A stretch of DNA of 64,000 nt from Macrostomum lignano. Taxonomy: Eukaryota. Location: the NCBI GenBank assembly GCA_002269645.1, contig NIVC01000029.1, forward strand, positions 1,054,001 to 1,118,000, given 5' to 3'. Below, piece by piece: positions 1 through 58,508 of this stretch. The notes beneath the pieces are model-generated. The model did no database searches. It was not told where the DNA came from and saw only the letters and a program-made list of their open reading frames with translations. The position numbers were made by a program, and so were the translations under genes. Within the stretch, counting starts at the first letter, position 1; every line of letters begins with the position of its first letter.

Positions 1-2370
1 TCAAAGAGCATCAGCTCTGTGTATGATAATGCAGTGAGCGAGACATGGGAGTTTTGCGGCAAAACGCCAACAAATGTTTCTCATGGAGAAACACTGACAG
101 TTCCTTGTATCAGGGATCAGGTAACAATTTTTTGCGTGAAGTTTAAATAGAGTAGAAATGATTCAATTTTATCCACCATATTGTGACCCCGAGAAAAGAC
201 ACTAAACTCTGTATTGCTTCAGCTGTAAAATGGGTGCCAGCATTAGCTGGGGTAATTGAGGGTGTGTGGGCGACCCCTCAGTCCTTGGACTGAACAGCCG
301 TACGCAGCCTTCAGATGCGCCGCGCAATAGCTGCGGCTGAGCTGTCGGTTGCACATCTGGCCCAAATGGGGTAGGTGTAAATATTTAATTAATTACTTAT
401 TATTATTTATCAGGTTCAGATAATACTACTTCGAAAATATGTCGCCAATGAAACTGTGCCACAAAGACAGTGCATGAACTTTGTCGATATGTGGATCGGC
501 CTCCATGGCGTTCAAAGTGAGTCGCTATATAAATTTAAAATCTTAAGATAGTTCCCATCCAATGTACCGCTAATCATATCTGATCTCATCCAGCTGATTT
601 TCAAACATTGAACGGATCTTCAATTGGACAAGTGAAACAGAACTCAAGTGTGACAGTGAGCTGCCAATCAAACTGCTCAATAAATACCTCACTGATCACT
701 CTGACTCGAAATGACGAGAATCGAACTCTTGCAAACGGAAGCCAGGCTTATGAGATTTCGCATGTGCAACCATCAGATGCGGGAAACTACACCTGCAGAG
801 CAGGTGGTGTCGTGTTGAGCTCCAAGTATCTTCGCGTGCTGTGTGAGTTGATGCACTTAAAAGGGATTAGGCTCAAGACTGTTTATATGTTTAATGTATG
901 AAACAAATTTAAGAAGTGAGCATTATCTGAGACGTACTAAATAAACATGAAATTCTAATTTTAACTAATACATTTGCGTAACTTCCAGTATGCTAACTAC
1001 ATCAAGCTCGGAGCCACTTTTTAAAGATTTCTTTTATACCATTAATTGACTAGTTGCATCACTATTTTAGCCCCTCTTATTATTCTTGGTAAACTATAAC
1101 TTCTTATAATTAAAAAACTCTACCGTATTTCAGATCCTCCGATGGACCTTACAATCGGGATAGTCAAGTCCTGCAACTGCGACACCAACTCTGCCAGCCA
1201 ACTGCTGACTTTCGAGTTCAAGTCATCCGAGTCAGAGCCAGTAGCGAATCACAGCTGCTCTGTGAATGGCAATCTTTCAAATGAAATTAACGCCACTGTT
1301 GCTGTCACAGCCGAGGAATTGAACAACTCTTTTGACAACGGTTCAGTGAAAAAAATCCAGTTGGACCTGCTATGACTGTTGTACAGCCATCGGCTTGTCG
1401 AATTTAACTATAAATTGCACGGCTGTTCAGTCAGGAGTGCCCTGGCATTCGACCATCACCGAAATTCTTTCAATATCTAGATGTGGTACGCAAGTCCTTT
1501 ACGTCTCGCAAGTCATGACGGACTTAAAATACGCATTGGAGAAATATTACACTGTAGTATATAAATAAATAAAAATCTTTGACACGTTTAGCAGGGACTA
1601 CGTGTAGTACAGTATCTAACGTCAGTGGAAAACTATCTGGGTAAAATAAGGATAGACTAGAGTATTACTCGTATTTTTATACTTACGCTCGTATTTAGGA
1701 TTTTTAGTTGAGATTTTTAGCCACACTGAACACTGTAAAATATTCAGAGACGAAGTCGGTTGGCTCGAAACAGCAGAAAGAACCCTTATGGTTGGCATTC
1801 GTCTTAACCGTATCGACAGTGGTTGCGGTGGGCGTTCTTGCTCTAGCGATCATCTACCAGATGAGAAAGGTGAATTCCAATGAATTTCTTATAACGATCT
1901 TGTACTGAAATTTACACAGAAGTTTTAAATTATTTTATAAACTTTAGAAGCCGGCAGTTCAGGTGCAACCGCAAAAGTCTCAGGAAGTTGAAACTAAGCC
2001 AGCTATAGCCCAAGATCAAGCTGATGAAGCACTACCACGAGAGCCTCCGCGATCTACAGAGAGTTTCGATCAGGCTTCCAACAGTCGACTGAACTCTGCG
2101 TACGGGGTATGTGATTACCAGCAGAACACGTAGCTACCTTATCTCACTGCACGTGAGGCAGCTTCTGGTCACAGATTTTTACGCGTACTTTCTTCACTTC
2201 AGAACGAAACTGAATGCATATATACAGCCCTGGTACCTAAAGCTAATGGCAAATTCAACGCTGATATTCTACAAGAGACGTCGGGCGCGAGCACGCGACC
2301 TATCAGCGACTGCACCGAGTACATTGAGATTGTATCTGATGGGCCTCTGATAGATGCTGAGAATGGCTAA
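1..2370 (+). CDS. Receptor paralog 1 (5'-truncated by window): end of F-type-lectin-like domain, Ig domain, second Ig/Fn-like domain, TM, tail with TEYIEI; has a +1 frameshift
   Basis: Exons <1-120, 414-516, 594-842, 1134-1485, 1748-1869, 1948-2106, 2203-2370, all GT-AG. Phases agree except 1134-1485, which is 352 nt (one extra base at the A7 run 1349-1355). Ig motif DAGNYTC; TM LWLAFVLTVSTVVAVGVLALAIIYQMRK; homologous exon by exon to the gene at 4448-7833 (WEFCGKTP vs WDFCGKTP; 103-nt exon in both). AATAAA at 2405. Confidence 0.8.
183..378 (+). mobile_element. SINE family 1, 5'-truncated copy in an intron
   Basis: Near-identical to 3600-3800 and 30340-30540 (GCTGTAAAATGGGTGCCAGCATTAGCTGGGGTAATTGAGGG...CAGCCGTACGCAGCCTTCAGATGC). 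Confidence 0.85.
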
Positions 2371-3505
2371 ATACAAGCTGCTAACCGTTGAGTCGAGAAA
2401 CTTTAATAAAGAATTTTGAGACAGATTTTATAATGTATTATTCATGTATTGATAACGATTGTATTTATTCTTGACCTTAAAATAATAATTATTAATCATC
2501 TTTGATACTTTAGGACTCTCATAAAGTAGGACTGTCACAACTCTCATAAATAGTTTCTCTAACTTGATCGTTTTTTTAGTCCTACCAACTCAAATTTGAC
2601 TTTTTAAATGGAGGTTATCAGGTTTGAAAAACAGTTATTGTATGTTAATGAAAACGATATAAACACCAAGGTCCCCGTTATAAGAAAGCCTTTTAGTGGT
2701 CTTTGTCACTAAACCTCTGCTCTGTAACCATAATTGATTAATGATTAGTTATTCAATAAATACTCAATAGGCTTTGAGCATGTACCAATACGAGCCACAC
2801 CTTTTGTATGGTAGCTACGGTAGCTATGGTAACCGATCTGTTTGTTCTACGTCAGATTTTTTCCAAGCCGCTCCCAACGCTCTCAGTATTTCAGATGCAA
2901 GCATGCACACACAAACTGTTTGCCCCTCATTGCTTCAATTTTAATAGCTCTGATGTTTAAATTAAGATACATTTAACTCTAGACTAGACCGATATTTACT
3001 ATAATCTAAATATTATTTCATACCAACATCATGCTATTTATTTAAAGTGTCAATACACTATAAAAAGCATAAGAGCCACTGAGAGTTTGTGAATCTACAC
3101 GTATCTCAAACGGCAAAACTTTTATGGCGACATTTTTCGGGCTGTGGGAGAGATTTTACTATTCAAATATTTCTTTGTCTACTTTTCTCAGTAGTATAAA
3201 TTGAACAGCTGCGAAAAGCAAGAAAAATTTCAACATTACAAAAACATTCATGCAGTTTTTAGAAAACACCATAGCTAGCTGCAGCAGAATTTCGATTTAT
3301 CCTATGCTGGAAATTTATAAATCTGCGAGCTAAATTGCGGTTTAAAAGTTTAATTGTGATCAATTAGCTACTGAATTCTTCGATGACAAATTTTAGTTTG
3401 CACTCTGCTTGGCTTTTAGTTGACATTTAAAAAAATATATTGTATATGAGCTGTCGCGAATGTAGTTAGTTCTACCGGGGGTATATTAAGAAGAATAATG
3501 AATAA

Positions 3506-3812
3506 GAGTCTATAGCCTTAATGGTTAGAGCGTCGGACTTACGACTTGAAGGTCAGGGGTTTGATTCCCGATCCCATGCACTAGAAAAAAATTGTGTTCT
3601 TGAGCAAGGCATTTACAACTCTGCATTGCTTCAGTTCACCCAGCTGTAAAATGGGTGCCAGCATTAGCTGGGGTAATTGAGGGTGTGTGGCGACCCCCCA
3701 GTCCTTGGACTGAACAGCCGTACGCAGCCTTCAGATGCACCGCACCGCAATAGCTGCGGCTGGGCTGTCAGTTGAACATCTGACCCAATCGGGACAGGTA
3801 TAGTCTATTATT
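3506..3812 (+). mobile_element. SINE family 1, full length: tRNA-derived head, CORE-like central domain, (TAT)n tail
   Basis: A-box-like TAGCCTTAATGGTTAGAG and B-box-like GGTTTGATTCC. TGTTCTTGAGCAAGGCATTT...CTTCAGTTCACCCAGCTGTAAAATGGG resembles the MIR/CORE motif CCTTGGGCAAGTCACTT...CTCAGTTTCCTCATCTGTAAAATGGG. At least 4 copies in the window. Confidence 0.8.
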
Positions 3813-4287
3813 ATTAAAAATTAAATTGAGGTCTGCACGAGTATAGTCTCTCTGTATGAAATTGGCCGAATTCAGCGGTTTCCCTAACAATGTCATCAGT
3901 TTTCTGACAATAGATAAGTCCAAATCATGCAAGTACAAACACGAATGACGCTTACCGAACGGTAGGAGTTTTTCACTCAGAGATTTAGTCCTAGTGAACT
4001 TCCTCTTGTCTCCTTTGGGACTTCTCGAAGTCTGAGACTTCCGCTTGAATTTTATAAGTTTATAGAAATACAAAAATGTAGGCTGAACTTCGGTCAAACC
4101 GGTTCTTTGATGAGTTTTACGGAAAGAAATTTAAATATTTGGCAGGTGGGAATCTATGAATTTGAGGGACGCGCACGATCAAGATTTGGGATCATTTTCA
4201 AGGCAATGCTTACCACATTTAGAATTCTAAAAATAGTGGATAGGCACACTTGTTTACATAGTATTTGCATACAACTATTTAATACAT

Positions 4288-4441
4288 GCGCAACCTTGGG
4301 AATCACTCAGCCGTTTCTATTGGCAACACACACATGTAAGTCGCTATTGGACGGAATAGTAGTCACGTGACTACTCTTAGCCAATAGCGACTTCCATGTG
4401 TGTTGCCAATAGAAACGGCCGGGTGAATCCCAAGGTTGCGC
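4288..4441. mobile_element. 154-bp near-perfect palindrome (MITE-like hairpin) centred on GTCACGTGAC
   Basis: Arms GCGCAACCTTGGGA... and ...TCCCAAGGTTGCGC pair along almost their whole length; the perfect core is AGTAGTCACGTGACTACT. Confidence 0.7.
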
Positions 4442-4447
4442 TCAAGC

Positions 4448-7400
4448 ATGAACCATTTACACCTCTTTGTTTTGCAGGGTTTCAGCTTACTACTTTTAGC
4501 AGCACACTTATATATTGCTTGTAGGTCCAAAATTCAAAATTAACGGTAAAATGACTGCAGCAAACACGATGTCAAAATAATTTTAAACTTAATTCGATTC
4601 CTCAAGTGATCCTAACTTTGGTTAAAAAAGGTTTATTTGAAACTGAAAAGGCAGAAGATATAATACCTTGCAAACTATTTTCATTTTTGCTGGCACTATA
4701 CGTGTATTTGTTCGAATGTGAAGAAAGGATGAAGTGCTAGGCACACCGATGCACAGTTTAAATGCAGTTAATACAACTATTTTCGTTTGAAAATTTTAGA
4801 AATTCATTGCTATCGAATCGATTATTCAGATTTGAAAGTGGCCAGCAAAGGTATAAACAATCTAGTATGGTATATATTTGCACCACAGAATATTCTGAGA
4901 CTTGCACTGTAGCTATAAATTATCTGGGTTACCATCTATCTAGCAGATTCCACCGCAGTTGTCGTGAACCAGTGACTTTATTTTCCCGCTCCAGTGATGA
5001 ATATTCTGGCAACCATCTGCTTTTCTGTGGGAATTTTTATAAGACAAACTACAGGAGACTTCAAAGCATGTGAGTGTGAATTATATGATATCATTTTCGG
5101 AGAGAAACCGTACGTTTGAGTTAAACAACTTTTATCATGTTTACATGTAGCTTTGCTGTTTAAAAATTTTAGGTAGAGAATACATCACCAGAGACACAGT
5201 CGGTGATTCGTGGCAGTCTTCAAGTTTTTATGATAGAAATACTGAGTCAACGTGCTTTAAAAATCAAGCAACTAAGACAGATGACTTCAGATTCTTACAT
5301 TATAAAGTTGGCTTGAACTATACGGACAATGGATTTCATTGGTTTGTGATAAAGCTAAAGGAGCAGAAACTGATCAGCTCAGTCACCATCACTGCTAGAA
5401 GTGAGTTTATTTTCATTGCATTTTTTAACGAGCCTATGCAGAGTTTTACGAGTTTGTTTAATGTAGTTGTGATGATCAATTACAATAAAAAAATCGACAC
5501 AGTAAAGCACTCACCTTTTCCTTTTTGTGAAGTGCACCTTGTGACAGTTTAAATTACCAAATAATATAATTTGTTATAGTTTCGTAGCTATTTTCACGCG
5601 GTAAGCAGTCGTTCTGTATGCGTTTCAGAGAAAGTTTTCAATATTCTTGGTCAATTGCTTGTACATTCATTGTAGCATGTATTGCGCCATCCGATACACT
5701 AAAAACGAAGTGATTCTTACGTCAAAGTATTGATTTGACTTTAACAATTGGTTTTCATTTCATTCAAACTACGTCAGAGCTGCATACCGGGGAAGAGAAA
5801 GACAAAAGTGGCATATTAAACCCTCGAGCAGCAGAAATTGAGATATGGACATCCAAGACAGACGGGATGAACTTCGGACAAAACCACTGCGATACTAAGA
5901 ACAGACTGGCTAACTTTGAACAAGCAGAGAACCGCTCGTGGGATTTCTGCGGCAAGACTCCACAAGAAGTATCTTCGGCAGATAACCTCACTGTCGATTG
6001 CGTCAGGCCAGGGGTACGTAAGCCTTCATCTTCAGGTGCAAATTTCGCACTCAATTTGTGGTTTTATCCGGATAACCAAGCGGTTGGGTGATTCAGAAAA
6101 AGCAACAAGATCACATAGACTTAGCTTCATTTGCAGTGAATTTAGGTTGCAATAGTGCTCGACCACAGATCAGTTTTGATCATTTTTGAGGGAAGTGAGT
6201 AAGTCTGGTTGTCTAAAAGTATGGCCATATCTAAAAAATATAGGGCATCCATCCAACTTCTACGATTAACCTCTTTATTATCTTCACCTCATTGCTTTCA
6301 TGGTAGGTTCGAATGCTACTGCTCCGAAAGAAAGCCACCAGTGAGGGTGATGATGAAAAAAATTGCATGAATTTTGAGAACATGTGGATTGAGCAAGTCT
6401 ACACCCAAAGTAAGTTACTTTGTAACATCCATGAGTCTGTCTTGAGTTTGTTTTATAAGTGGCTCGATCTAAGCCAATAAAAAAGTTATAAATCAGTCAC
6501 TATTTGTAAAGAGAAAAGCTAGAAAATGTATTGAGACTTGTCTAACAAAACTAGTAATTCGCAAAGCGATTTTTAGTGGACTATATCAACGATTTTTAAA
6601 AAAGAAGCATATTTTGCTCTTTGCAGTTAAAATCCCGCTTCAATCGGTAACAATAAATTATTCAGTAGCTGTAAACTGTAGCGTACAGTGCACCAGAGAT
6701 TCGAATATTACGGCCATACTGGAGCACTTCGGGACTCGGGCAAGCAGGCGCACTCTTGCCTCAGGAAACAATACTCACCCTGCCACAAAAATGATTGAAA
6801 AAGCGCGACCAGAAGATGCTGGGAATTACACTTGCAGCAGCAGTTTTAGTGGACAACCGCTTGACATCAAGAGCAGACATCTCCAAGTATTTTGTAAGTT
6901 CATAAATGATAAATCTACTGACGTGTGTTGGTAAATAACCTATTTCGGATGAATAGCAACTTGTCTTTTAAATTTCAGATCCGCCTGAAAATTTGAAAAT
7001 CTCTGCAAACACTAGCGATGGTCAATGCCTCACATCCGGCTCGCTGACTTTACGATTTTTATTCGAGTCCTGGCATTCTGAGCCGGCTCCTGAGCACAGC
7101 TGCGCAGCTTCCGACTCGCTAAATAACAGTATTTCACTGGTCATAATTGCTAACGTTAGTAAAACAAAAGCGTACACATTTACATCAGTTCGGCTGTGCC
7201 CGAATTGCAGCGTTAGCAATGTCTTGACGGTAAATTGTAAAGCAATTCAGTACAACGAATCGAAAGTTTTGTGGAGCGTCCATCGGAATAAAAGTATGAA
7301 GATTTGCAATGAGATAGAACGACATAAGTTGGTGTTCATTGTTGCAACCGTGCTGAGCGTCGTTATATTGACTGTTTTGGGCGGCTTTGGCGTAAATATC

Positions 7401-7833
7401 ATTTGGCGATTAAAAAAGGTATACATCTTCCTAAAGAAAGCGCCACATTTAACTTTCAATCATTGATGCTAAACGTGTCAACTTGAAAACATGATTTGCA
7501 GCAGGATTTGCCAGTACAACTGCTCGTGACTACTGGTACCAGTCCAACCTCTGAAGAGAATTCAGCAACTGTGAACCACGAAATGTTACAACCGCAGCAA
7601 AAACCGAAGCTAGCAAGAGCTGCGACTACAACATATTTTGCAGATGTAAGTTCTACTCTGGAATAATTAGCGCATGATACATAACAACAGTGCAATACCC
7701 AAACTTTATACAGGAATCAAAGACCGTCACGTATTCCGTGCTGCTTCCAACGTCGTCCCAGGATCAGACGGAGGTCAATCGGCCTCAAAGCGACGCAACA
7801 GAATACTTAGAAATTGTCAACGATGGACTCTGA
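4448..7833 (+). CDS. Receptor paralog 2, about 578 aa: signal peptide, divergent F-type lectin (FTP/F5-8C-like) domain, Ig, second Ig/Fn-like domain, TM, ITIM (VTYSVL) and ITSM (TEYLEI)
   Basis: Exons 4448-4524, 4830-5069, 5291-5400, 5778-6013, 6307-6409, 6627-6893, 6979-7418, 7502-7645, 7714-7833 splice in phase into an uninterrupted 1737-nt ORF. FTP-like motifs KQSS, HWFVIKL..ISSVTITAR, AEIEIW, FCG..LTVDC..GVR; Ig DAGNYTC; TM LVFIVATVLSVVILTVLGGFGVNIIW. The first exon is the least certain. Confidence 0.8.
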
Positions 7834-8088
7834 CGTGCACTTATCAAGCACTGCATCGAGGATATTATTAGACAATTTGAAGTAGATGTACTTTGCAAAC
7901 AGTCAAAAGTAGCAAAATTAGAGTATGTATGCCCAAAGCAAACGGTACCTAGGCCAAGAAGCGTCCCGTTAGAGTCAGTTGCGTCGCGCCAGAGCCGTTG
8001 CAGGTAACACAGGTACTCGTAAAATAGGAAAGTGACTTAGGACGACTCTAAAACGACGGGATGCCTCGGTACAAGCCGCCAAATAATA

Positions 8089-8325
8089 ATAATAATTGAT
8101 TACACCTGTCCCAATTGGGCCAGATGTGCAACCGACAGCTCAGCCGCAGCTATTGCGCGGCGCATCTGAAGGCTGCGTACGGCTGTTCAGTCCAAGGACT
8201 GGGGGGTCGCCACACACACCCTCAATTACCCCAGCTAATGCTGGCACCCATTTTACAGCTGGGTGAACTGAAGCAATGCAGAGTTAAGTGTCTTGCTCAA
8301 GGACACAAACTGTTCCAGTGGGTTT
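8089..8325 (-). mobile_element. SINE family 1 copy (reverse orientation, headless)
   Basis: Reverse complement of the 3590-3810 body; tail appears as TAATAATAAT at the left end. Confidence 0.85.
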
Positions 8326-8866: not shown

Positions 8867-9764
8867 TTTCGCGACTCTTACGATTCTTCAACATAAAGTG
8901 ACGCGCTTGCGACGCAAAATTCGTCTTTTCGTCGCATATAGAGACTCGTTTGAGTCGTTAAAAAGTCACAGGAGTTGCTCATTAGTCGCGAGAGTCACTG
9001 GAAAGTTACTTCGTACTTGTAATGACTTTTTTAGCCATTCTTGTCACGGTAACATTTTCAACAGGATTCTTCTCCGAGTGTACGAGCGTAGAAACGAAGT
9101 AAAAAGCTGATAAAAAGAGAATAAAAGTATTACCTAAGTGATAATCTGTTTAAGTCTTAAGAAGTGAAGATCTGCTATCTATTCACTGCAAGTTAAGCAG
9201 ATTTGGTCGTGGTTAGCACGCAGCTGAATAGGCTTGCGTGTCACTTTCTGGCGAGTAGAGAAGAGAAAATCATTCTGCTGTGATGATAGGGTAGGTAGCT
9301 TGCAAGTCACATTGTAGCCAGAAAAAATGATTTCGCGATCTTGTATTCATTCACTTTCAACTATTATTCAGCTCCTTTGTCAATAAAAGCATCCATTTTT
9401 TGTCTTGATTTACTAATTATATAACTCGTAAAAATTTTAATGCCTATTAGACAGCTAATTGGACAGAGTACTACTGTCGAAACTGCTACTTACTACTATC
9501 AGTACTACCAGCATTACTACCAGGTGAAACATAATAGTCTATTCAAGCAGTTTTTCCTATTCTACCTTTGACTCCCTTGTTAAATGAAAGAAAAATAAAC
9601 GAGCACTACCATTAAAGAAATTTATTTTACAAAAATAGCTAAGCTGTGTTGCCGTAAAAAACCAACACAAACGCGCATGTATTTCCTGAAAATGTTGTTT
9701 TAAGTTGCGTAACAATTTCTGCCTCGAATAACACTAGAGTTTACAGACAAGAATAGACTGTGAA

Positions 9765-10625
9765 AATGCGATTTTAAGGAGTGGTTGATGGCGATTTCAG
9801 GGAGTGGTTGATGGCGATTCCAAGGAGTCGTTGATGGCGATTCCAGGGAGTGGTTGATGGCGATTCCAAGGAGTCGTTGATGGCGATTCCAGGGAGTGGT
9901 TGATGGCGATTCCAAGGAGTCGTTGATGGCGATTCCAGGGAGTGGTTTATGGCGATTCCAGGGAGTGGTTTCTGGGGATTCCAGGGAGTGGCTGATGGCG
10001 ATTTCAGGGAGTGGTTGATGGCGATTTTAGGGAGTGGTTGATGGCGATTCCAGGGAGTGGTTTCTGGGGATTCCAGGGAGTGGCTGATGGCGATTTCAGG
10101 GAGTGGTTGATGGCGATTTTAGGGAGTGGTTGATGGCGATTCCAGGGAGTGGCTGATGGCGATTTCTGGGAGTGGATTCTGGGGATTCTAGGGAGTGGTT
10201 TATGGCGATTTTAGGGAGTGGTTTATGGCAATTCCAAGGAGTCGTTGATGGCGATTCCAGGGAGTGGTTAATGGCGATTTTAGGGAGTGGTTTCTGGGGA
10301 TTCCAGGGAGTGGTTTATGGCGATTCCAGGGAGTGGTTTCTGGGGATTCCAGGGAGTGGTTTATGGCGATTCCAGGGAGTGGTTTCTGGGGATTCCAGGG
10401 AGTTGGTTTATGGCGATTCCAGGGAGTGGTTTCTGGGGATTCCAGGGAGTGGCTGATGGCGATTTCTGGGAGTGGTTGATGGCGATTCCAGGGAGTGGTT
10501 TATGGCGATTTCTGGGAGTGGCTGATGGCGATTCCAGCGAGTGGTTTATGGCGATTCCAGGGGGTGGTTGATGGCGATTCCAGCGAGTGGTTTATGGCGA
10601 TTCCAAGGAGTCGTTGATAGCGATT
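9765..10625. repeat. 23-bp minisatellite (GGGAGTGGTTGATGGCGATTCCA)n
   Basis: Direct tandem units with variants; lies just 3' of the RPAP1 stop codon. Confidence 0.95.
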
Positions 10626-26690: not shown

Positions 26691-27365
26691 TCACACTTTC
26701 GGAACAACCGCATTATGCTCTTCATCAGTCTCCAATCCGACCTCTTCAAAGAAGGCCTTCTTACTAGCTGGATAGCCTTCCAATACGCAGTCGATCAGGT
26801 CAACGCAAGCCCGTTTCCGTTTGCGCCATTCCGAGACAAGATTAGCGCGTATCTTCCTCGCGTCGGACATCAACTCCGGCGTGACCTTGCGACCCTCGCC
26901 GCTGTCTATGGCCGCTAGGCGTTCAGTTTTAGGCGCCAATTCGGCTTGTAGCTCGGCAAGTCGAGCTCGCAATTGTTCGCAAGTTGGTCGCTGACGCAAG
27001 GTCGCGAGTTCGCGTTGTAATTTTTTCACCTCAGCCTGCTCAACGACTAGTTCCCGTTCGGCTGTTTGAGCTCGAGTCTCTAAATCGCGTTTCTCAGCTT
27101 CGTCCGGCAGAGCATTGGTAGGCGCACTACCGTCGCTATTACTACTACTGGCAGTAGGCTGTTTAACAACGTAAACTTTCTGCTTGCCGTAGGTTTTCTC
27201 GTTAATTAGGCCGGCAGAGACAAGGCTGTCCAAGGCGCGTTGGATGGCAGTTTTACCTACGGCTTTGTGCAAATTACTAAATACGTCATTAACGCTATAG
27301 GGTCTGTTAGCGTCGCGCATGTAGTCAAGGACGCGTTTTTCGTCTGGATTCGAGCTGGTTGCCAT
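26691..27365 (-). CDS. PSMC3IP: Homologous-pairing protein 2 (HOP2/TBPIP), intronless, 224 aa
   Basis: Winged-helix N-terminus YMRDANRPYSVNDVFSNL..GKTAIQRALDSL..KTYGKQKVY, coiled coil, WRKRKR and EEVGLETDEE C-terminus typical of Hop2. Confidence 0.93.
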   Translation of the reverse strand: MATSSNPDEKRVLDYMRDANRPYSVNDVFSNLHKAVGKTAIQRALDSLVSAGLINEKTYGKQKVYVVKQPTASSSNSDGSAPTNALPDEAEKRDLETRAQTAERELVVEQAEVKKLQRELATLRQRPTCEQLRARLAELQAELAPKTERLAAIDSGEGRKVTPELMSDARKIRANLVSEWRKRKRACVDLIDCVLEGYPASKKAFFEEVGLETDEEHNAVVPKV

Positions 27366-57503: not shown

Positions 57504-58508
57504 ATGAGCTCATCAGCTGACAATAACTCAGCTGAGGAGCGCGAGTTACGTCAACTCCGCGTAGCAGCATCAGACGCTGGCCTGGACTGTCGAGGCAATG
57601 CTGAAATCCTGCGTCGTAGAATTCGCAGCTACAAGCAGGCTCGAGTTGAGCAGGCCTATCGCTACCTGCTAGTTGTAGACTTTGAAGCCACCTGCGAGAG
57701 TCAAAATCCCGATAATTATCAGCACGAAATCATCGAATTTCCATTAGTATTACTAGATCTACACGAGGGCAAAGTTGTAGATAAATTTCACACCTATTGT
57801 CGGCCTAAACTGCATCCTAAACTGTCTGAGTTCTGTCGTCAGTTTACTGGCATTGAGCAGGATGTTGTGGACTCGGCGCCGAGTTTCCCAGCCGCACTGG
57901 CCGCCGTTCAAGCTTGGCTGCAGCATTCTGACGCATTGACTGAGCCGCTGGCTCTGGCTGCCGACTGTCAAGCAGATGTGGCAACATTTCTGCGCCTTCA
58001 GTGCTCTCTCGACGGCATTCCAGTGCCAGCTTGGGCGCACTATTGGGTGAATCTGAGGATCACATTCCAGCGTCACTATGCACTAGAAAGGAAGCTTAAT
58101 TTATCTGGCATGCTGGCTGCTCTTGGCCTGGAATTCGAGGGCAGGCCGCACTGCGGTCTGGACGATGCAGTTAATGTGGCTAAAATAGCTTTGCAGTTAG
58201 CGGCCGACGGCTGCAGATTGTTAGTTAATCAGCGACTCGATCAGAATAAATCGCCATACTATTGGCGCCCCGTTTACAAAGCCGAAGCCGAGGCCAAGCT
58301 GCGTTCGGACGCGGCTGCCGGTGGAACGACGACAAGTCGACAGCGTGGCAGACGAGGAAGACGACAGGCATCCCCGGAGGCGGCCGCTGCAGAAGCCAGA
58401 CTTGATGATATTTGTGACGACGAGACTGAAGAGAGTTTAAGCGATCTACTCTACCTGGTGAACCTGCGTAATAATCGCGGCGGTGCTGGTGGCAGTTCTA
58501 CTAGATAA
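57504..58508 (+). CDS. ERI1: 3'-5' exoribonuclease ERI1 (SAP + DEDDh domain), intronless CDS, 334 aa
   Basis: SAP-like LRQLRVAASDAGLDCRGNAEILRRRI; VVDFEATC, HEIIEFP, FHTYCRP..HPKLSEFC..FTGI, LGLEFEGRPHCGLDDA. Upstream acceptor TTTTCAG at 57449; AATAAA at 58538. Confidence 0.93.
   Translation: MSSSADNNSAEERELRQLRVAASDAGLDCRGNAEILRRRIRSYKQARVEQAYRYLLVVDFEATCESQNPDNYQHEIIEFPLVLLDLHEGKVVDKFHTYCRPKLHPKLSEFCRQFTGIEQDVVDSAPSFPAALAAVQAWLQHSDALTEPLALAADCQADVATFLRLQCSLDGIPVPAWAHYWVNLRITFQRHYALERKLNLSGMLAALGLEFEGRPHCGLDDAVNVAKIALQLAADGCRLLVNQRLDQNKSPYYWRPVYKAEAEAKLRSDAAAGGTTTSRQRGRRGRRQASPEAAAAEARLDDICDDETEESLSDLLYLVNLRNNRGGAGGSSTR

What the first reader, a model, noticed from the sequence alone, without database searches (positions are those of the whole stretch)
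1..7833. Tandem invertebrate lectin-Ig receptors with a Siglec/PD-1-like ITIM + ITSM tail: candidate inhibitory immune-receptor family
Seen: hand-splicing gives two paralogous type-I membrane proteins, [F-type-lectin-like domain]-[Ig]-[Ig/Fn-like]-TM-tail. The last exon of paralog 2 encodes VTYSVL (7726-7743) and then TEYLEI (7798-7815) near the C-terminus. Paralog 1 has CIYTAL and TEYIEI at equivalent positions, although the rest of the tails barely align. Established: (S/I/V/L)xYxx(I/V/L) is the ITIM and TxYxx(V/I) the ITSM, and a proximal ITIM plus distal ITSM (e.g. TEYSEI in CD33-type Siglecs, TEYATI in PD-1) recruits SHP-1/SHP-2. Inference: a glycan-sensing inhibitory receptor cluster that reached Siglec-like logic independently, using an F-lectin fold. 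The motifs do not appear in the ORF track because they sit in short terminal exons.
Basis: partly seen in the sequence, partly recalled or inferred. Interest (0 to 1): 0.88.

Follow-up and report, generated by a model that had tools for sequence, protein, structure and literature searches.

The report
Flatworm Ig receptors with ITIM/ITSM-like tails
Two neighbouring genes of the flatworm Macrostomum lignano encode lineage-specific cell-surface proteins whose otherwise divergent tails keep three tyrosine motifs, including a near copy of the vertebrate "switch" motif, so they are credible but untested candidates for phosphotyrosine-signalling, possibly inhibitory, receptors.

Summary
The window is Macrostomum lignano (Mlig_3_7, NIVC01000029.1). 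The splice chains, motif sequences and coordinates are real. Paralog 2 (4997-7833) is an intact 8-exon, 536-aa (not 578) type I glycoprotein. Its parts are a signal peptide, an orphan ~190-aa N-domain, one Ig domain, an unclassifiable Cys-rich domain, a TM segment and an 87-aa tail. Paralog 1 is cut by the window start and has a 1-nt frameshift in an A7 run.

The tails are about 15% identical except for three aligned tyrosines. TEY(L/I)EI lies in a block with 12 of 16 residues identical, and half of those use different codons, which argues for purifying selection. VTYSVL is a canonical ITIM. CIYTAL is not, because Cys is at -2.

The "F-lectin-like" label has weak but specific support. Pfam and PDB sequence searches find nothing. 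hhalign against solved F-lectins scores 25.1 (0 of 300 shuffles reach it), equal to the true F-lectin/discoidin relation under the same conditions, and two of the three fucose-binding positions align with Arg.

Relatives were found only in M. lignano. The one other member with a tail lacks ITIM/ITSM. Immune function, glycan binding and SHP recruitment are all untested. Verdict: a new variant of a known kind, of moderate interest.

The parts
1..120 (+). Paralog 1, end of the N-domain exon (cut by the window start): SKSISSVYDNAVSETWEFCGKTPTNVSHGETLTVPCIRDQ, donor gtaaca
   Evidence: The M. lignano UniProt entry P0002 (A0A1I8G312) ends in SKSISSVYDNA, so this exon continues upstream of the window.
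414..516 (+). Paralog 1, last N-domain exon (VQIILLRKYVANETVPQRQCMNFVDMWIGLHGVQ)
   Evidence: 46% identical to P2 exon 4.
594..842 (+). Paralog 1, Ig-domain exon flanked by phase-1 introns
   Evidence: Taken alone it passes Pfam thresholds: Ig_3 34.1 bits (cut-off 30) and Ig_2 30.3 bits (cut-off 27). The GTGAGT donor follows base 842.
1134..1485 (+). Paralog 1, third (Cys-rich, membrane-proximal) domain exon; the frame is broken by one extra A in the A7 run at 1349-1355
   Evidence: Dropping one A restores the alignment to P2. The assembly is Pilon-polished PacBio, so this may be an assembly error or a very recent lesion.
1748..1869 (+). Paralog 1, separate TM exon (LWLAFVLTVSTVVAVGVLALAIIY, then QMRK)
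1948..2106 (+). Paralog 1, proximal cytoplasmic exon ending in the first conserved tyrosine (NSAYG, 2095-2106)
2203..2370 (+). Paralog 1, last exon: ITIM-like CIYTAL 2215-2232, ITSM TEYIEI 2314-2331, conserved block 2296-2343, stop 2368-2370. AATAAA follows at 2405-2410.
4997..5069 (+). Paralog 2, exon 1: start codon and signal peptide (MNILATICFSVGIFIRQTTG)
5173..5400 (+). Paralog 2, exon 2: first part of the N-domain, with HWFVIKLKEQKLISSVTITAR, the stretch that matches the F-lectin WWRVDL...VTITNR motif
5778..6013 (+). Paralog 2, exon 3: middle of the N-domain (PRAAEIEIWTS...HC...WDFCGKTP...LTVDC), the most family-conserved ectodomain stretch
6307..6409 (+). Paralog 2, exon 4: end of the N-domain (VRMLLLRK...CMNFENMWIEQVYTQ)
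6627..6893 (+). Paralog 2, exon 5: Ig domain flanked by phase-1 introns
   Evidence: Pfam family 'ig' 21.9 bits against a cut-off of 21.8, with Ig_3 and Ig_2 below their cut-offs.
6979..7418 (+). Paralog 2, exon 6: third domain of unknown fold (6979-7328), TM helix LVFIVATVLSVVILTVLGGFGVNIIW (7329-7406) and the stop-transfer RLKK
   Evidence: hydropathy peak at residues 415-447. No Pfam family was found. AlphaFold on the single sequence gave pLDDT 32 and is unusable.
7502..7645 (+). Paralog 2, exon 7: proximal tail ending in the first conserved tyrosine, TTYFAD (7628-7645)
7714..7833 (+). Paralog 2, exon 8: ITIM VTYSVL 7726-7743, ITSM TEYLEI 7798-7815, conserved block 7780-7827, stop 7831-7833

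Best explanation
Two tandem, anciently diverged paralogs (33-40% identical in the ectodomain) belong to a Macrostomum-restricted family of type I membrane glycoproteins.

Architecture: signal peptide; a ~190-aa N-terminal domain with no recognisable family, most likely a beta-sandwich distantly related to F-type lectins; one Ig domain; a Cys-rich membrane-proximal domain of unknown fold; a single TM helix; and an 87-108-aa cytoplasmic tail.

In the tail only three tyrosine-centred motifs are conserved:
- Y1, [ST]xYxx[DE], at the end of the penultimate exon.
- Y2, YxxLxP, the 7th residue of the last exon in both genes. It is a canonical ITIM in paralog 2.
- Y3, TEY(L/I)EI, a canonical ITSM.

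Proposed mechanism. The N-domain plus Ig domain engages a ligand, possibly a glycan. A Src-family kinase then phosphorylates the tail tyrosines. The Y2/Y3 pair docks an SH2 protein, most plausibly the tandem-SH2 phosphatase Csw/SHP-2. The receptor then damps, or switches, tyrosine-kinase signalling in the cell that carries it.

What is shown: gene structure, topology, the Ig domain, motif identity, and purifying selection on the motifs. What is inferred: phosphorylation, the SH2 partner, the inhibitory sign, the ligand class, and any immune role.
For: - Gene models: eight canonical GT-AG exons with an open frame, Ig exons flanked by phase-1 introns, and shared intron positions and phases in the two paralogs.
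- Topology: an N-terminal hydrophobic signal, a single 26-residue TM helix followed by RLKK, and all 14 N-glycosylation sequons on the ectodomain side.
- Ig domain: passes Pfam thresholds.
- Family: independent M. lignano gene models (UniProt A0A1I8GI92, A0A1I8JL91, A0A1I8J0M2, A0A1I8G312) carry the same N-domain spliced to an Ig or a third-domain-plus-TM segment.
- Tail: about 15% identity proximally, but all three tyrosines of each tail align in order. The terminal block RPxSDxTEYxEIVxDG is 12 of 16 identical (P=2e-7), and 6 of the 12 identical residues use different synonymous codons. This points to selection on the protein, not to gene conversion.
- Motifs: VTYSVL fits the ITIM and TEYLEI/TEYIEI fit the ITSM; they are rare by chance. 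Y2-Y3 spacing is 24 and 33 residues.
- Precedent: Shp2/Csw is present from cnidarians to bilaterians (PMC7260276). Invertebrate receptors with ITIM-type motifs that bind SHP/SHIP are documented, for example amphioxus BbLcLRR (PMC8211107).
- N-domain: hhalign against five solved F-lectin domains scores 25.1 over 53 columns, and 0 of 300 column shuffles reach it. Discoidin, galectin, Fn3 and Ig controls score 11-15. The true F-lectin/discoidin relation scores 24.4 in the same set-up.
Against: - There is no transcript, expression, phosphorylation or binding evidence.
- No gene model for either paralog turned up in the protein collections. Those searches also missed proteins known to be in the collection, so this negative carries no weight either way.
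- Paralog 1's Y2 motif has Cys at -2, and its reading frame is broken as assembled.
- The only other family member with a tail (P0006) has SVYVDD/SVYVSD and no ITIM or ITSM.
- All four YxxL/I motifs also fit the YxxPhi AP-2 sorting signal. From my own knowledge, pYxEI also resembles the optimal Src-family SH2 ligand pYEEI, so the partner need not be a phosphatase.
- ITIM-like strings are common and poorly predictive on their own.
- Whether M. lignano has Csw/SHP-2 or a SAP-like adaptor was not tested here.
Confidence: 0.4

Rival explanations
1. The tail does signal through phosphotyrosine, but it is neither inhibitory nor immune. The tyrosines would dock other SH2 or PTB proteins, such as Src-family kinases through pYxEI, or Shc, PI3K or Crk-type adaptors. 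The proteins would then act as adhesion or developmental signalling receptors, in the manner of PECAM-1, CEACAM1 or PZR/MPZL1, in neural, epidermal, gut or reproductive tissue.
For: All the structural evidence for the best explanation applies equally. A third conserved tyrosine, [ST]xYxx[DE], is neither an ITIM nor an ITSM, and it is the only tyrosine motif retained (twice) in P0006. Nothing in the neighbourhood is immune-related: Hop2, an ERI1-like exonuclease, a Lamp-like gene and a rhomboid-like ORF.
Against: The ITIM-then-ITSM order and the 24-residue spacing in P2 fit a tandem-SH2 phosphatase best (own knowledge of PD-1, Siglec-7/9 and CEACAM1). Thr at -2 and Ile at +3 are conserved in both paralogs, which generic SH2 docking would not require.
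Confidence: 0.25
2. The tyrosine motifs are YxxPhi (with an acidic cluster) sorting signals read by AP-2 or AP-1. The proteins would then be endocytic, scavenger or recycling receptors that take up a ligand, possibly a glycan, without phosphotyrosine signalling.
For: YSVL, YLEI, YTAL and YIEI all fit YxxPhi. Acidic residues flank Y3 (SDxTEYxEIVxDG). The ectodomain is heavily glycosylated and possibly lectin-like.
Against: YxxPhi needs only Tyr and the +3 residue. Here Thr at -2, Glu at -1, Glu at +2 and residues from -8 to +7 are also conserved. Three conserved tyrosines in a tail with no other conservation is more typical of multi-site phosphorylation. The first conserved tyrosine (YFAD/YGNE) has no hydrophobic +3 residue and cannot be a YxxPhi signal.
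Confidence: 0.2
3. The loci are not functional genes. They would be decaying copies of a lineage-specific family, or a hand-spliced artefact, and the motif resemblance would be fortuitous.
For: Paralog 1 carries a frameshift. No gene model for either locus was retrieved. P0004 looks like a frameshifted twin of P0005. The DV1 genome is highly redundant.
Against: Paralog 2 is intact over 8 exons and 1611 nt with consensus splice sites. After its single-base lesion, paralog 1 stays open for about 200 codons over 4 exons, and an AATAAA lies 35 nt past its stop. The synonymous-versus-replacement pattern in the motif block indicates long-term purifying selection. The frameshift sits in a homopolymer of a PacBio-based assembly. 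The retrieval failures are technical.
Confidence: 0.08

Closest known systems
CD33-related Siglecs (e.g. Siglec-7/-9)
   Same: Type I membrane protein with a candidate N-terminal carbohydrate-binding module followed by Ig-type domain(s). The tail has a proximal ITIM and a distal TEYSEI-type motif; TEYLEI and TEYIEI share 5 of 6 residues with it (own knowledge of the Siglec sequence).
   Different: The N-terminal module is not a V-set Ig domain and has no Siglec sequence similarity. Flatworms are not known to make sialic acid ligands. Any likeness would be convergent architecture, not homology.
PD-1 (ITIM VDYGEL + ITSM TEYATIV)
   Same: The ITIM-then-ITSM order; a Tyr-Tyr spacing of 24 in P2 against 25 in PD-1; and TEYxxIV, shared with TEYLEIV and TEYIEIV (own knowledge of the PD-1 sequence; window sequence).
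   Different: PD-1 has a single IgV ectodomain and belongs to the CD28 family. The flatworm proteins have three unrelated ectodomain modules and no sequence homology outside the 7-residue motif.
CEACAM1-L and PECAM-1 (Ig adhesion receptors with paired ITIM/ITSM-type motifs that bind SHP-2)
   Same: Ig-containing, heavily glycosylated type I proteins with two spaced tyrosine motifs. The CEACAM1 proximal motif VTYSTL shares 5 of 6 residues with VTYSVL (own knowledge). These receptors show that such tails also serve non-immune adhesion signalling.
   Different: No homology of the ectodomains. Only one Ig domain here. An orphan N-domain is present.
Documented invertebrate receptors with ITIM-type motifs: amphioxus BbLcLRR (PMC8211107) and the Botryllus fester family (PMC12582321, PMC11507803)
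   Same: Lineage-specific, clustered or multi-copy receptor genes outside vertebrates whose tails carry ITIM or ITIM-like motifs. For BbLcLRR, SHIP/SHP binding was shown in a heterologous system.
   Different: Different ectodomains (LRR; SCR/other) and different phyla (chordates). No such receptor turned up for Platyhelminthes in the literature searches.
F-type lectin domain (Anguilla agglutinin 1K12, MsaFBP32 3CQO, bacterial FTLDs)
   Same: The WWxVDL...V.ITNR core motif aligns with HWFVIKL...VTITAR. In the hhalign alignment P2 Arg80 matches AAA Arg79, and the family-invariant Arg97 and Glu102 match AAA Arg86 and Glu91 (A1 position 82 plus 9) in GAE. The score equals that of the true F-lectin/discoidin relation.
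   Different: No Pfam or PDB sequence hit even at E=10; hhalign probability is only 10-20%. There is no CC pair. The His52 equivalent is not aligned. There is a 10-residue insertion and an extra ~25-residue segment (WDFCGKTP...). The fold and fucose binding are untested.

Membership tests
Immunoglobulin superfamily | An Ig-domain profile match at the curated threshold | tested here: met
   P1 Ig exon alone: Ig_3 34.1 bits (cut-off 30) and Ig_2 30.3 bits (cut-off 27). P2 Ig exon alone: 'ig' 21.9 bits (cut-off 21.8). The DAGNYTC motif is present in both.
Immunoglobulin superfamily | The domain is encoded by one exon flanked by phase-1 introns | tested here: met
   Exons 6627-6893 and 594-842 both begin and end in phase 1.
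ITIM/ITSM inhibitory receptors (functional class) | A type I membrane protein with the motifs on the cytoplasmic side | tested here: met
   Signal peptide, single TM helix at residues 420-445 followed by RLKK, all 14 N-glycosylation sequons N-terminal to the TM, and motifs at residues 502-507 and 526-531.
ITIM/ITSM inhibitory receptors (functional class) | ITIM consensus [S/I/V/L]xYxx[I/V/L] | tested here: inconclusive
   P2 VTYSVL fits. P1 CIYTAL fails at -2 (Cys). P0006 has none.
ITIM/ITSM inhibitory receptors (functional class) | ITSM consensus TxYxx[V/I] | tested here: met
   TEYLEI (P2) and TEYIEI (P1) lie in the most conserved block of the tail. The motif is absent from P0006.
ITIM/ITSM inhibitory receptors (functional class) | Tyrosine phosphorylation and recruitment of SHP-1/SHP-2/SHIP or SAP, with an inhibitory outcome | not testable with these tools
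   This needs biochemistry. Only the general presence of Shp2/Csw across Eumetazoa is documented (PMC7260276).
F-type lectin domain (FTLD) | A sequence-profile match at the curated threshold (Pfam F5_F8_type_C family models) or a match to solved FTLDs | tested here: not met
   No Pfam hit at E<=10. No PDB hit by phmmer or by profile at E<=10.
F-type lectin domain (FTLD) | Remote homology by profile-profile comparison | tested here: inconclusive
   hhalign score 25.1, P=0.003, probability 10-20%, 53 columns. 0 of 300 column shuffles reach it (maximum 18.7). Unrelated beta-sandwiches and discoidin score 11-15. The true FTLD-discoidin pair scores 24.4. My own FTLD HMM gives 7.4 bits, reached by 2 of 2000 shuffles.
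F-type lectin domain (FTLD) | The fucose-binding triad His52/Arg79/Arg86 (AAA numbering) | tested here: inconclusive
   Arg80 and the family-invariant Arg97 align with Arg79 and Arg86 in a low-probability alignment. The His is outside the aligned region, with candidates H47 and H60.
F-type lectin domain (FTLD) | The beta-jelly-roll fold and fucose binding | not testable with these tools
   The domain is split over three exons, and the structure tool refuses spliced sequences.
Siglecs (I-type lectins) | An N-terminal V-set Ig domain with the sialic-acid-binding Arg | tested here: not met
   The N-terminal ~190 residues give no Ig match. The single Ig domain is the second module and matches Ig_2, Ig_3 and 'ig'.

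The most novel reading that the evidence does not exclude
A flatworm lineage independently assembled a lectin-Ig-ITIM/ITSM inhibitory receptor family. A divergent F-lectin-type module would sense fucosylated self or microbial glycans and signal through Csw/SHP-2, so this would be Siglec/PD-1-like checkpoint logic arising by convergence in Platyhelminthes. The family might even be paired: P0006 lacks the Ig domain and the ITIM/ITSM and has a Glu inside its TM helix, as a counterpart of opposite sign might.
Probability: 0.12. Interest if true: 0.8.

Novelty: new variant of a known kind. Interest (0 to 1): 0.5.

Why it matters
In the literature held here, receptors with ITIM-type motifs are documented outside vertebrates only in a few lineages, such as amphioxus and Botryllus. 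My searches found none described for flatworms. M. lignano is transgenic-tractable and regenerative, and its innate immunity and cell-cell recognition are poorly known.

A lineage-restricted receptor family whose only conserved cytoplasmic features are three tyrosines, one a near copy of the Siglec/PD-1 switch motif, gives a concrete handle on two questions. The first is how old and how convergent SHP-2-type inhibitory signalling is. The second is what an orphan, possibly F-lectin-derived, ectodomain recognises.

If instead the motifs prove to be sorting signals, or the genes prove silent, this is just one more lineage-specific IgSF gene pair.

Tried and rejected
- The search for homologous proteins with full-length P2 and with a family alignment returned nothing. 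The second query contained P0005 and P0006, which are in that collection. These negatives are therefore failures of the word prefilter, not evidence of absence.
- The neighbour-gene search confirmed the species through a 66% paralog. It returned no gene model for this contig, so I could not walk upstream of the window.
- Structure prediction and the search of protein representatives refuse spliced proteins. The N-domain could not be modelled.
- The contiguous exon-6 ectodomain, folded alone, gave pLDDT 32 and was discarded. MAFFT misaligned the two halves of P1's frameshifted exon, so no alignment was used.
- PDB sequence searches with the N-domain, as a single sequence and as 2- and 4-sequence profiles, gave no hits at E<=10.
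- Pfam on the third domain of both paralogs gave nothing meaningful.
- The metagenome scan for relatives found none.
- Rfam and tRNA scans of the region found nothing.
- ITAM reading rejected: the Y2-Y3 spacing of 24-33 residues is too long.
- PDZ-ligand reading rejected: the C-termini differ (…VNDGL against …DAENG).
- Siglec and PD-1 family membership rejected on domain grounds.

Full report
**Origin of the window.** Two intronless genes in the window are a Hop2/TBPIP homologue (26691-27365, minus strand) and an RNase_T/ERI1-like exonuclease (57504-58508). Both are found exactly on NCBI GCA_002269645.1, contig NIVC01000029.1. This places the window at 1,054,001-1,118,000 of that record, in the same orientation. 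NIVC00000000 is the Mlig_3_7 assembly of the free-living flatworm Macrostomum lignano. It was built from PacBio reads with Canu, polished with Pilon, and is highly redundant because of chromosome duplication. A paralog of a neighbouring gene is also labelled M. lignano in UniRef.

**Check of the observation: paralog 2.** I re-spliced both genes from the raw sequence.
- The exons are 4997-5069, 5173-5400, 5778-6013, 6307-6409, 6627-6893, 6979-7418, 7502-7645 and 7714-7833.
- Every intron is GT-AG with good consensus, and the 1611-nt frame is open.
- It has an N-terminal hydrophobic signal and one strong hydrophobic segment (residues 420-445) followed by RLKK. There are 14 N-glycosylation sequons, all N-terminal to that segment. 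It is therefore a type I membrane glycoprotein.
- VTYSVL is at 7726-7743 and TEYLEI at 7798-7815, exactly as reported.

**Check of the observation: paralog 1.**
- It lies 2.6 kb upstream on the same strand and is cut by the window start.
- The exons are 1-120, 414-516, 594-842, 1134-1485, 1748-1869, 1948-2106 and 2203-2370.
- Intron positions and phases match paralog 2, except for one extra intron that isolates the TM exon.
With one A removed, the sequence aligns with paralog 2 and stays open for about 200 more codons to the stop. An AATAAA follows 35 nt later.
- In a PacBio-derived assembly this may be a homopolymer error or a very recent lesion. I cannot tell which.
- CIYTAL is at 2215-2232 and TEYIEI at 2314-2331.

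**Are the motifs more than chance?**
- Shuffled tails contain both an ITIM and an ITSM in 0.4% (P2) and 0.15% (P1) of trials.
- TxYxx[VI] occurs 17 times in the whole six-frame translation of the window, and two of these are the homologous last exons.
- Conservation is the stronger argument. The paralogs are 40% identical in the N-domain part available for P1, 32% in the Ig domain, 33% in the third domain and about 15% in the proximal tail. The block RPxSDxTEYxEIVxDG has 12 of 16 residues identical (binomial P about 2e-7). Six of those 12 use different synonymous codons. That indicates long-term selection on the peptide and not recent gene conversion.
- Each tail has exactly three tyrosines, and all three align in order. 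Y1 ends the penultimate exon (TTYFAD / SAYG|NE). Y2 is the 7th residue of the last exon in both genes (YSVLLP / YTALVP). Y3 is TEY(L/I)EI.
- Y2-Y3 spacing is 24 residues in P2 and 33 in P1.

**The ectodomain: Ig and third domains.** The Ig domain is real. Taken alone, P1's exon passes the Pfam thresholds for Ig_3 and Ig_2, and P2's just passes 'ig'. Both exons are flanked by phase-1 introns, which is the classic IgSF arrangement. The third, Cys-rich domain matches nothing. AlphaFold on the single sequence was useless, with pLDDT 32. 'Ig/Fn-like' therefore remains a guess.

**The ectodomain: the N-terminal domain.** This ~190-residue domain gives no Pfam hit at E<=10. It gives no PDB hit by phmmer or by family profile.
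- I retrieved five solved F-lectin domains from the PDB: 1K12, both domains of 3CQO, 4GWI and 2J1R.
- hhalign with P2 plus the P1 fragment aligned only the HWFVIKL...VTITAR / WWRVDL...VTITNR core (probability 20%, P=0.001).
- A four-member family profile extended the alignment to 53 columns (score 25.1, P=0.003, probability 10%).
- Controls: 300 column-shuffled profiles averaged 11.9 ± 2.3 with a maximum of 18.7. Discoidin (factor V C1/C2, sequences verified), galectin-1, an Fn3 domain and the protein's own Ig and third domains scored 11-15.
- Calibration: the true superfamily pair F-lectin versus discoidin scored 24.4 under identical shallow-profile conditions.
- A home-made F-lectin HMM scored the domain at 7.4 bits, matched by only 2 of 2000 shuffles.
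- In the hhalign alignment, P2 Arg80 and the family-invariant Arg97 fall on the fucose-binding Arg79 and Arg86 of the eel agglutinin. The His52 equivalent is not aligned.

My reading is that a distant F-lectin/galactose-binding-like origin is more likely than not. Membership is not demonstrated, and sugar binding is entirely untested. The decisive structure prediction could not be run, because the domain spans three exons and the tool refuses spliced sequences.

**Family breadth.** An exhaustive HMMER search of 1.84 billion cluster representatives with an exon-3 profile returned seven hits. Three (P0003, P0007, P0008) are internally repetitive proteins with multiple short matched stretches, and I treated them as spurious. 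The other four are all M. lignano UniProt entries.
- P0002 ends in SKSISSVYDNA, which are the first 11 codons of the window. It shows that paralog 1's N-domain continues upstream.
- P0004 and P0005 are near-twins whose N-domain is spliced to exon-4-type and Ig sequence at the same junctions. This is independent support for the exon chain.
- P0006 has the N-domain, no Ig domain, a third-domain-like segment, a TM helix containing a Glu, and a 58-residue tail with two SVYV[DS]D motifs but no ITIM or ITSM.

Nothing outside M. lignano reached E<=0.001, and a metagenome scan found nothing. The family therefore looks lineage-restricted, and the ITIM/ITSM pair is so far specific to the two window paralogs.

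The word-indexed protein search missed even P0005 and P0006 when they were part of the query. Its negatives say nothing about annotation or expression.

**Mechanism.** The best-supported reading is a ligand-binding type I receptor whose tail works through tyrosine phosphorylation. The proximal ITIM and distal ITSM, the Thr at -2 and Ile at +3, and the spacing in P2 fit the requirements of a tandem-SH2 phosphatase (own knowledge of PD-1, Siglec-7/9 and CEACAM1, which carry TEYATIV, TEYSEI and VTYSTL). P1's 33-residue spacing lies somewhat beyond that usual range. Shp2/Csw is documented from cnidarians onwards, and amphioxus offers a precedent for an invertebrate receptor with ITIM-type motifs that binds SHP/SHIP.

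The sequence shows the gene structure, the topology, the Ig domain, the motifs and the selection on them. Phosphorylation, the SH2 partner, the inhibitory sign, glycan sensing and any immune role are inferred. The rivals are:
- signalling through other SH2 adaptors in a non-immune adhesion or developmental setting;
- YxxPhi sorting signals;
- non-functional loci.

**Comparison and novelty.** The proteins are not Siglecs, since they have no N-terminal V-set domain. They are not PD-1/CD28 relatives, and they are not demonstrable F-lectins. They resemble these only in architecture and in 6-7-residue motifs. Receptors with ITIM-type motifs are documented in other invertebrates. Literature searches found none described for flatworms, and none combining an F-lectin with an ITIM. 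I therefore rate this a new variant of a known kind, with moderate interest. The conservation signal is good and the organism is tractable, but there are no functional data, and ITIM-type motifs predict function poorly on their own.

Noticed in passing
window 220-387 (+), 3480-3816 (+), 8087-8285 (-): Three copies of a SINE-like interspersed repeat of about 170-330 bp, 82-100% identical over the shared parts. One lies in an intron of paralog 1, one between the two genes and one inverted just downstream of paralog 2. The middle copy has a tRNA-like head, but ARAGORN calls no tRNA.
   Followed up: partly
window 4288-4441: A near-perfect inverted repeat (45-nt arms, 93% complementary, 64-nt spacer) about 550 bp upstream of paralog 2's start codon. 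It could be a MITE-like element or a regulatory palindrome.
   Followed up: no
window 1349-1355: An A7 homopolymer breaks the frame of paralog 1's third-domain exon. A6 would give an intact gene. This is either a PacBio homopolymer error or a very recent pseudogenising change.
   Followed up: partly
P0006 (UniProt A0A1I8J0M2, M. lignano; not in the window): A family member without the Ig domain. It has a Glu inside the TM helix (FWLLVVLLTEIIVL...) and a short tail carrying two SVYV[DS]D motifs in place of the ITIM/ITSM. It might be a functionally opposite or partner-dependent counterpart.
   Followed up: partly
P0004 / P0005 (UniProt A0A1I8JL91 / A0A1I8GI92): Near-identical family members that diverge abruptly after about 141 residues, as a frameshift between duplicated copies would produce. 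UniProt names P0004 a 'Ricin B-type lectin domain-containing protein', but Pfam finds nothing in it.
   Followed up: partly
window 9722-9997; 16.7-17.7 kb; 19.4-20.9 kb; 33.8-34.5 kb; 36.3-38.1 kb; 43-44.1 kb: Long simple or tandem repeat arrays: a 23-bp unit at 9722-9997; CTGT-type arrays that read as LSVCLSVC in ORFs; and a G-rich array with GC skew 0.72 at 36-38 kb. These fit the repeat-rich M. lignano genome.
   Followed up: no
window 10-21 kb (-), 26691-27365 (-), 31-36 kb (-), 47.4-51.4 kb (-), 57504-58508 (+), about 60-63 kb (+): Neighbouring genes are housekeeping in type: a large multi-exon gene whose paralog UniRef calls 'UCH domain-containing'; intronless Hop2/TBPIP; a membrane-protein ORF that I read as rhomboid-like (not tested against any family library); broken retrotransposon protease/integrase ORFs; an intronless ERI1-like RNase_T exonuclease; and a Lamp-like gene. 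Nothing is immune-related.
   Followed up: partly
tool behaviour: The word-indexed protein search returned no hit for a query alignment that contained two proteins known to be in its own collection. Its negatives for this low-complexity-flanked eukaryotic family are unreliable.
   Followed up: yes
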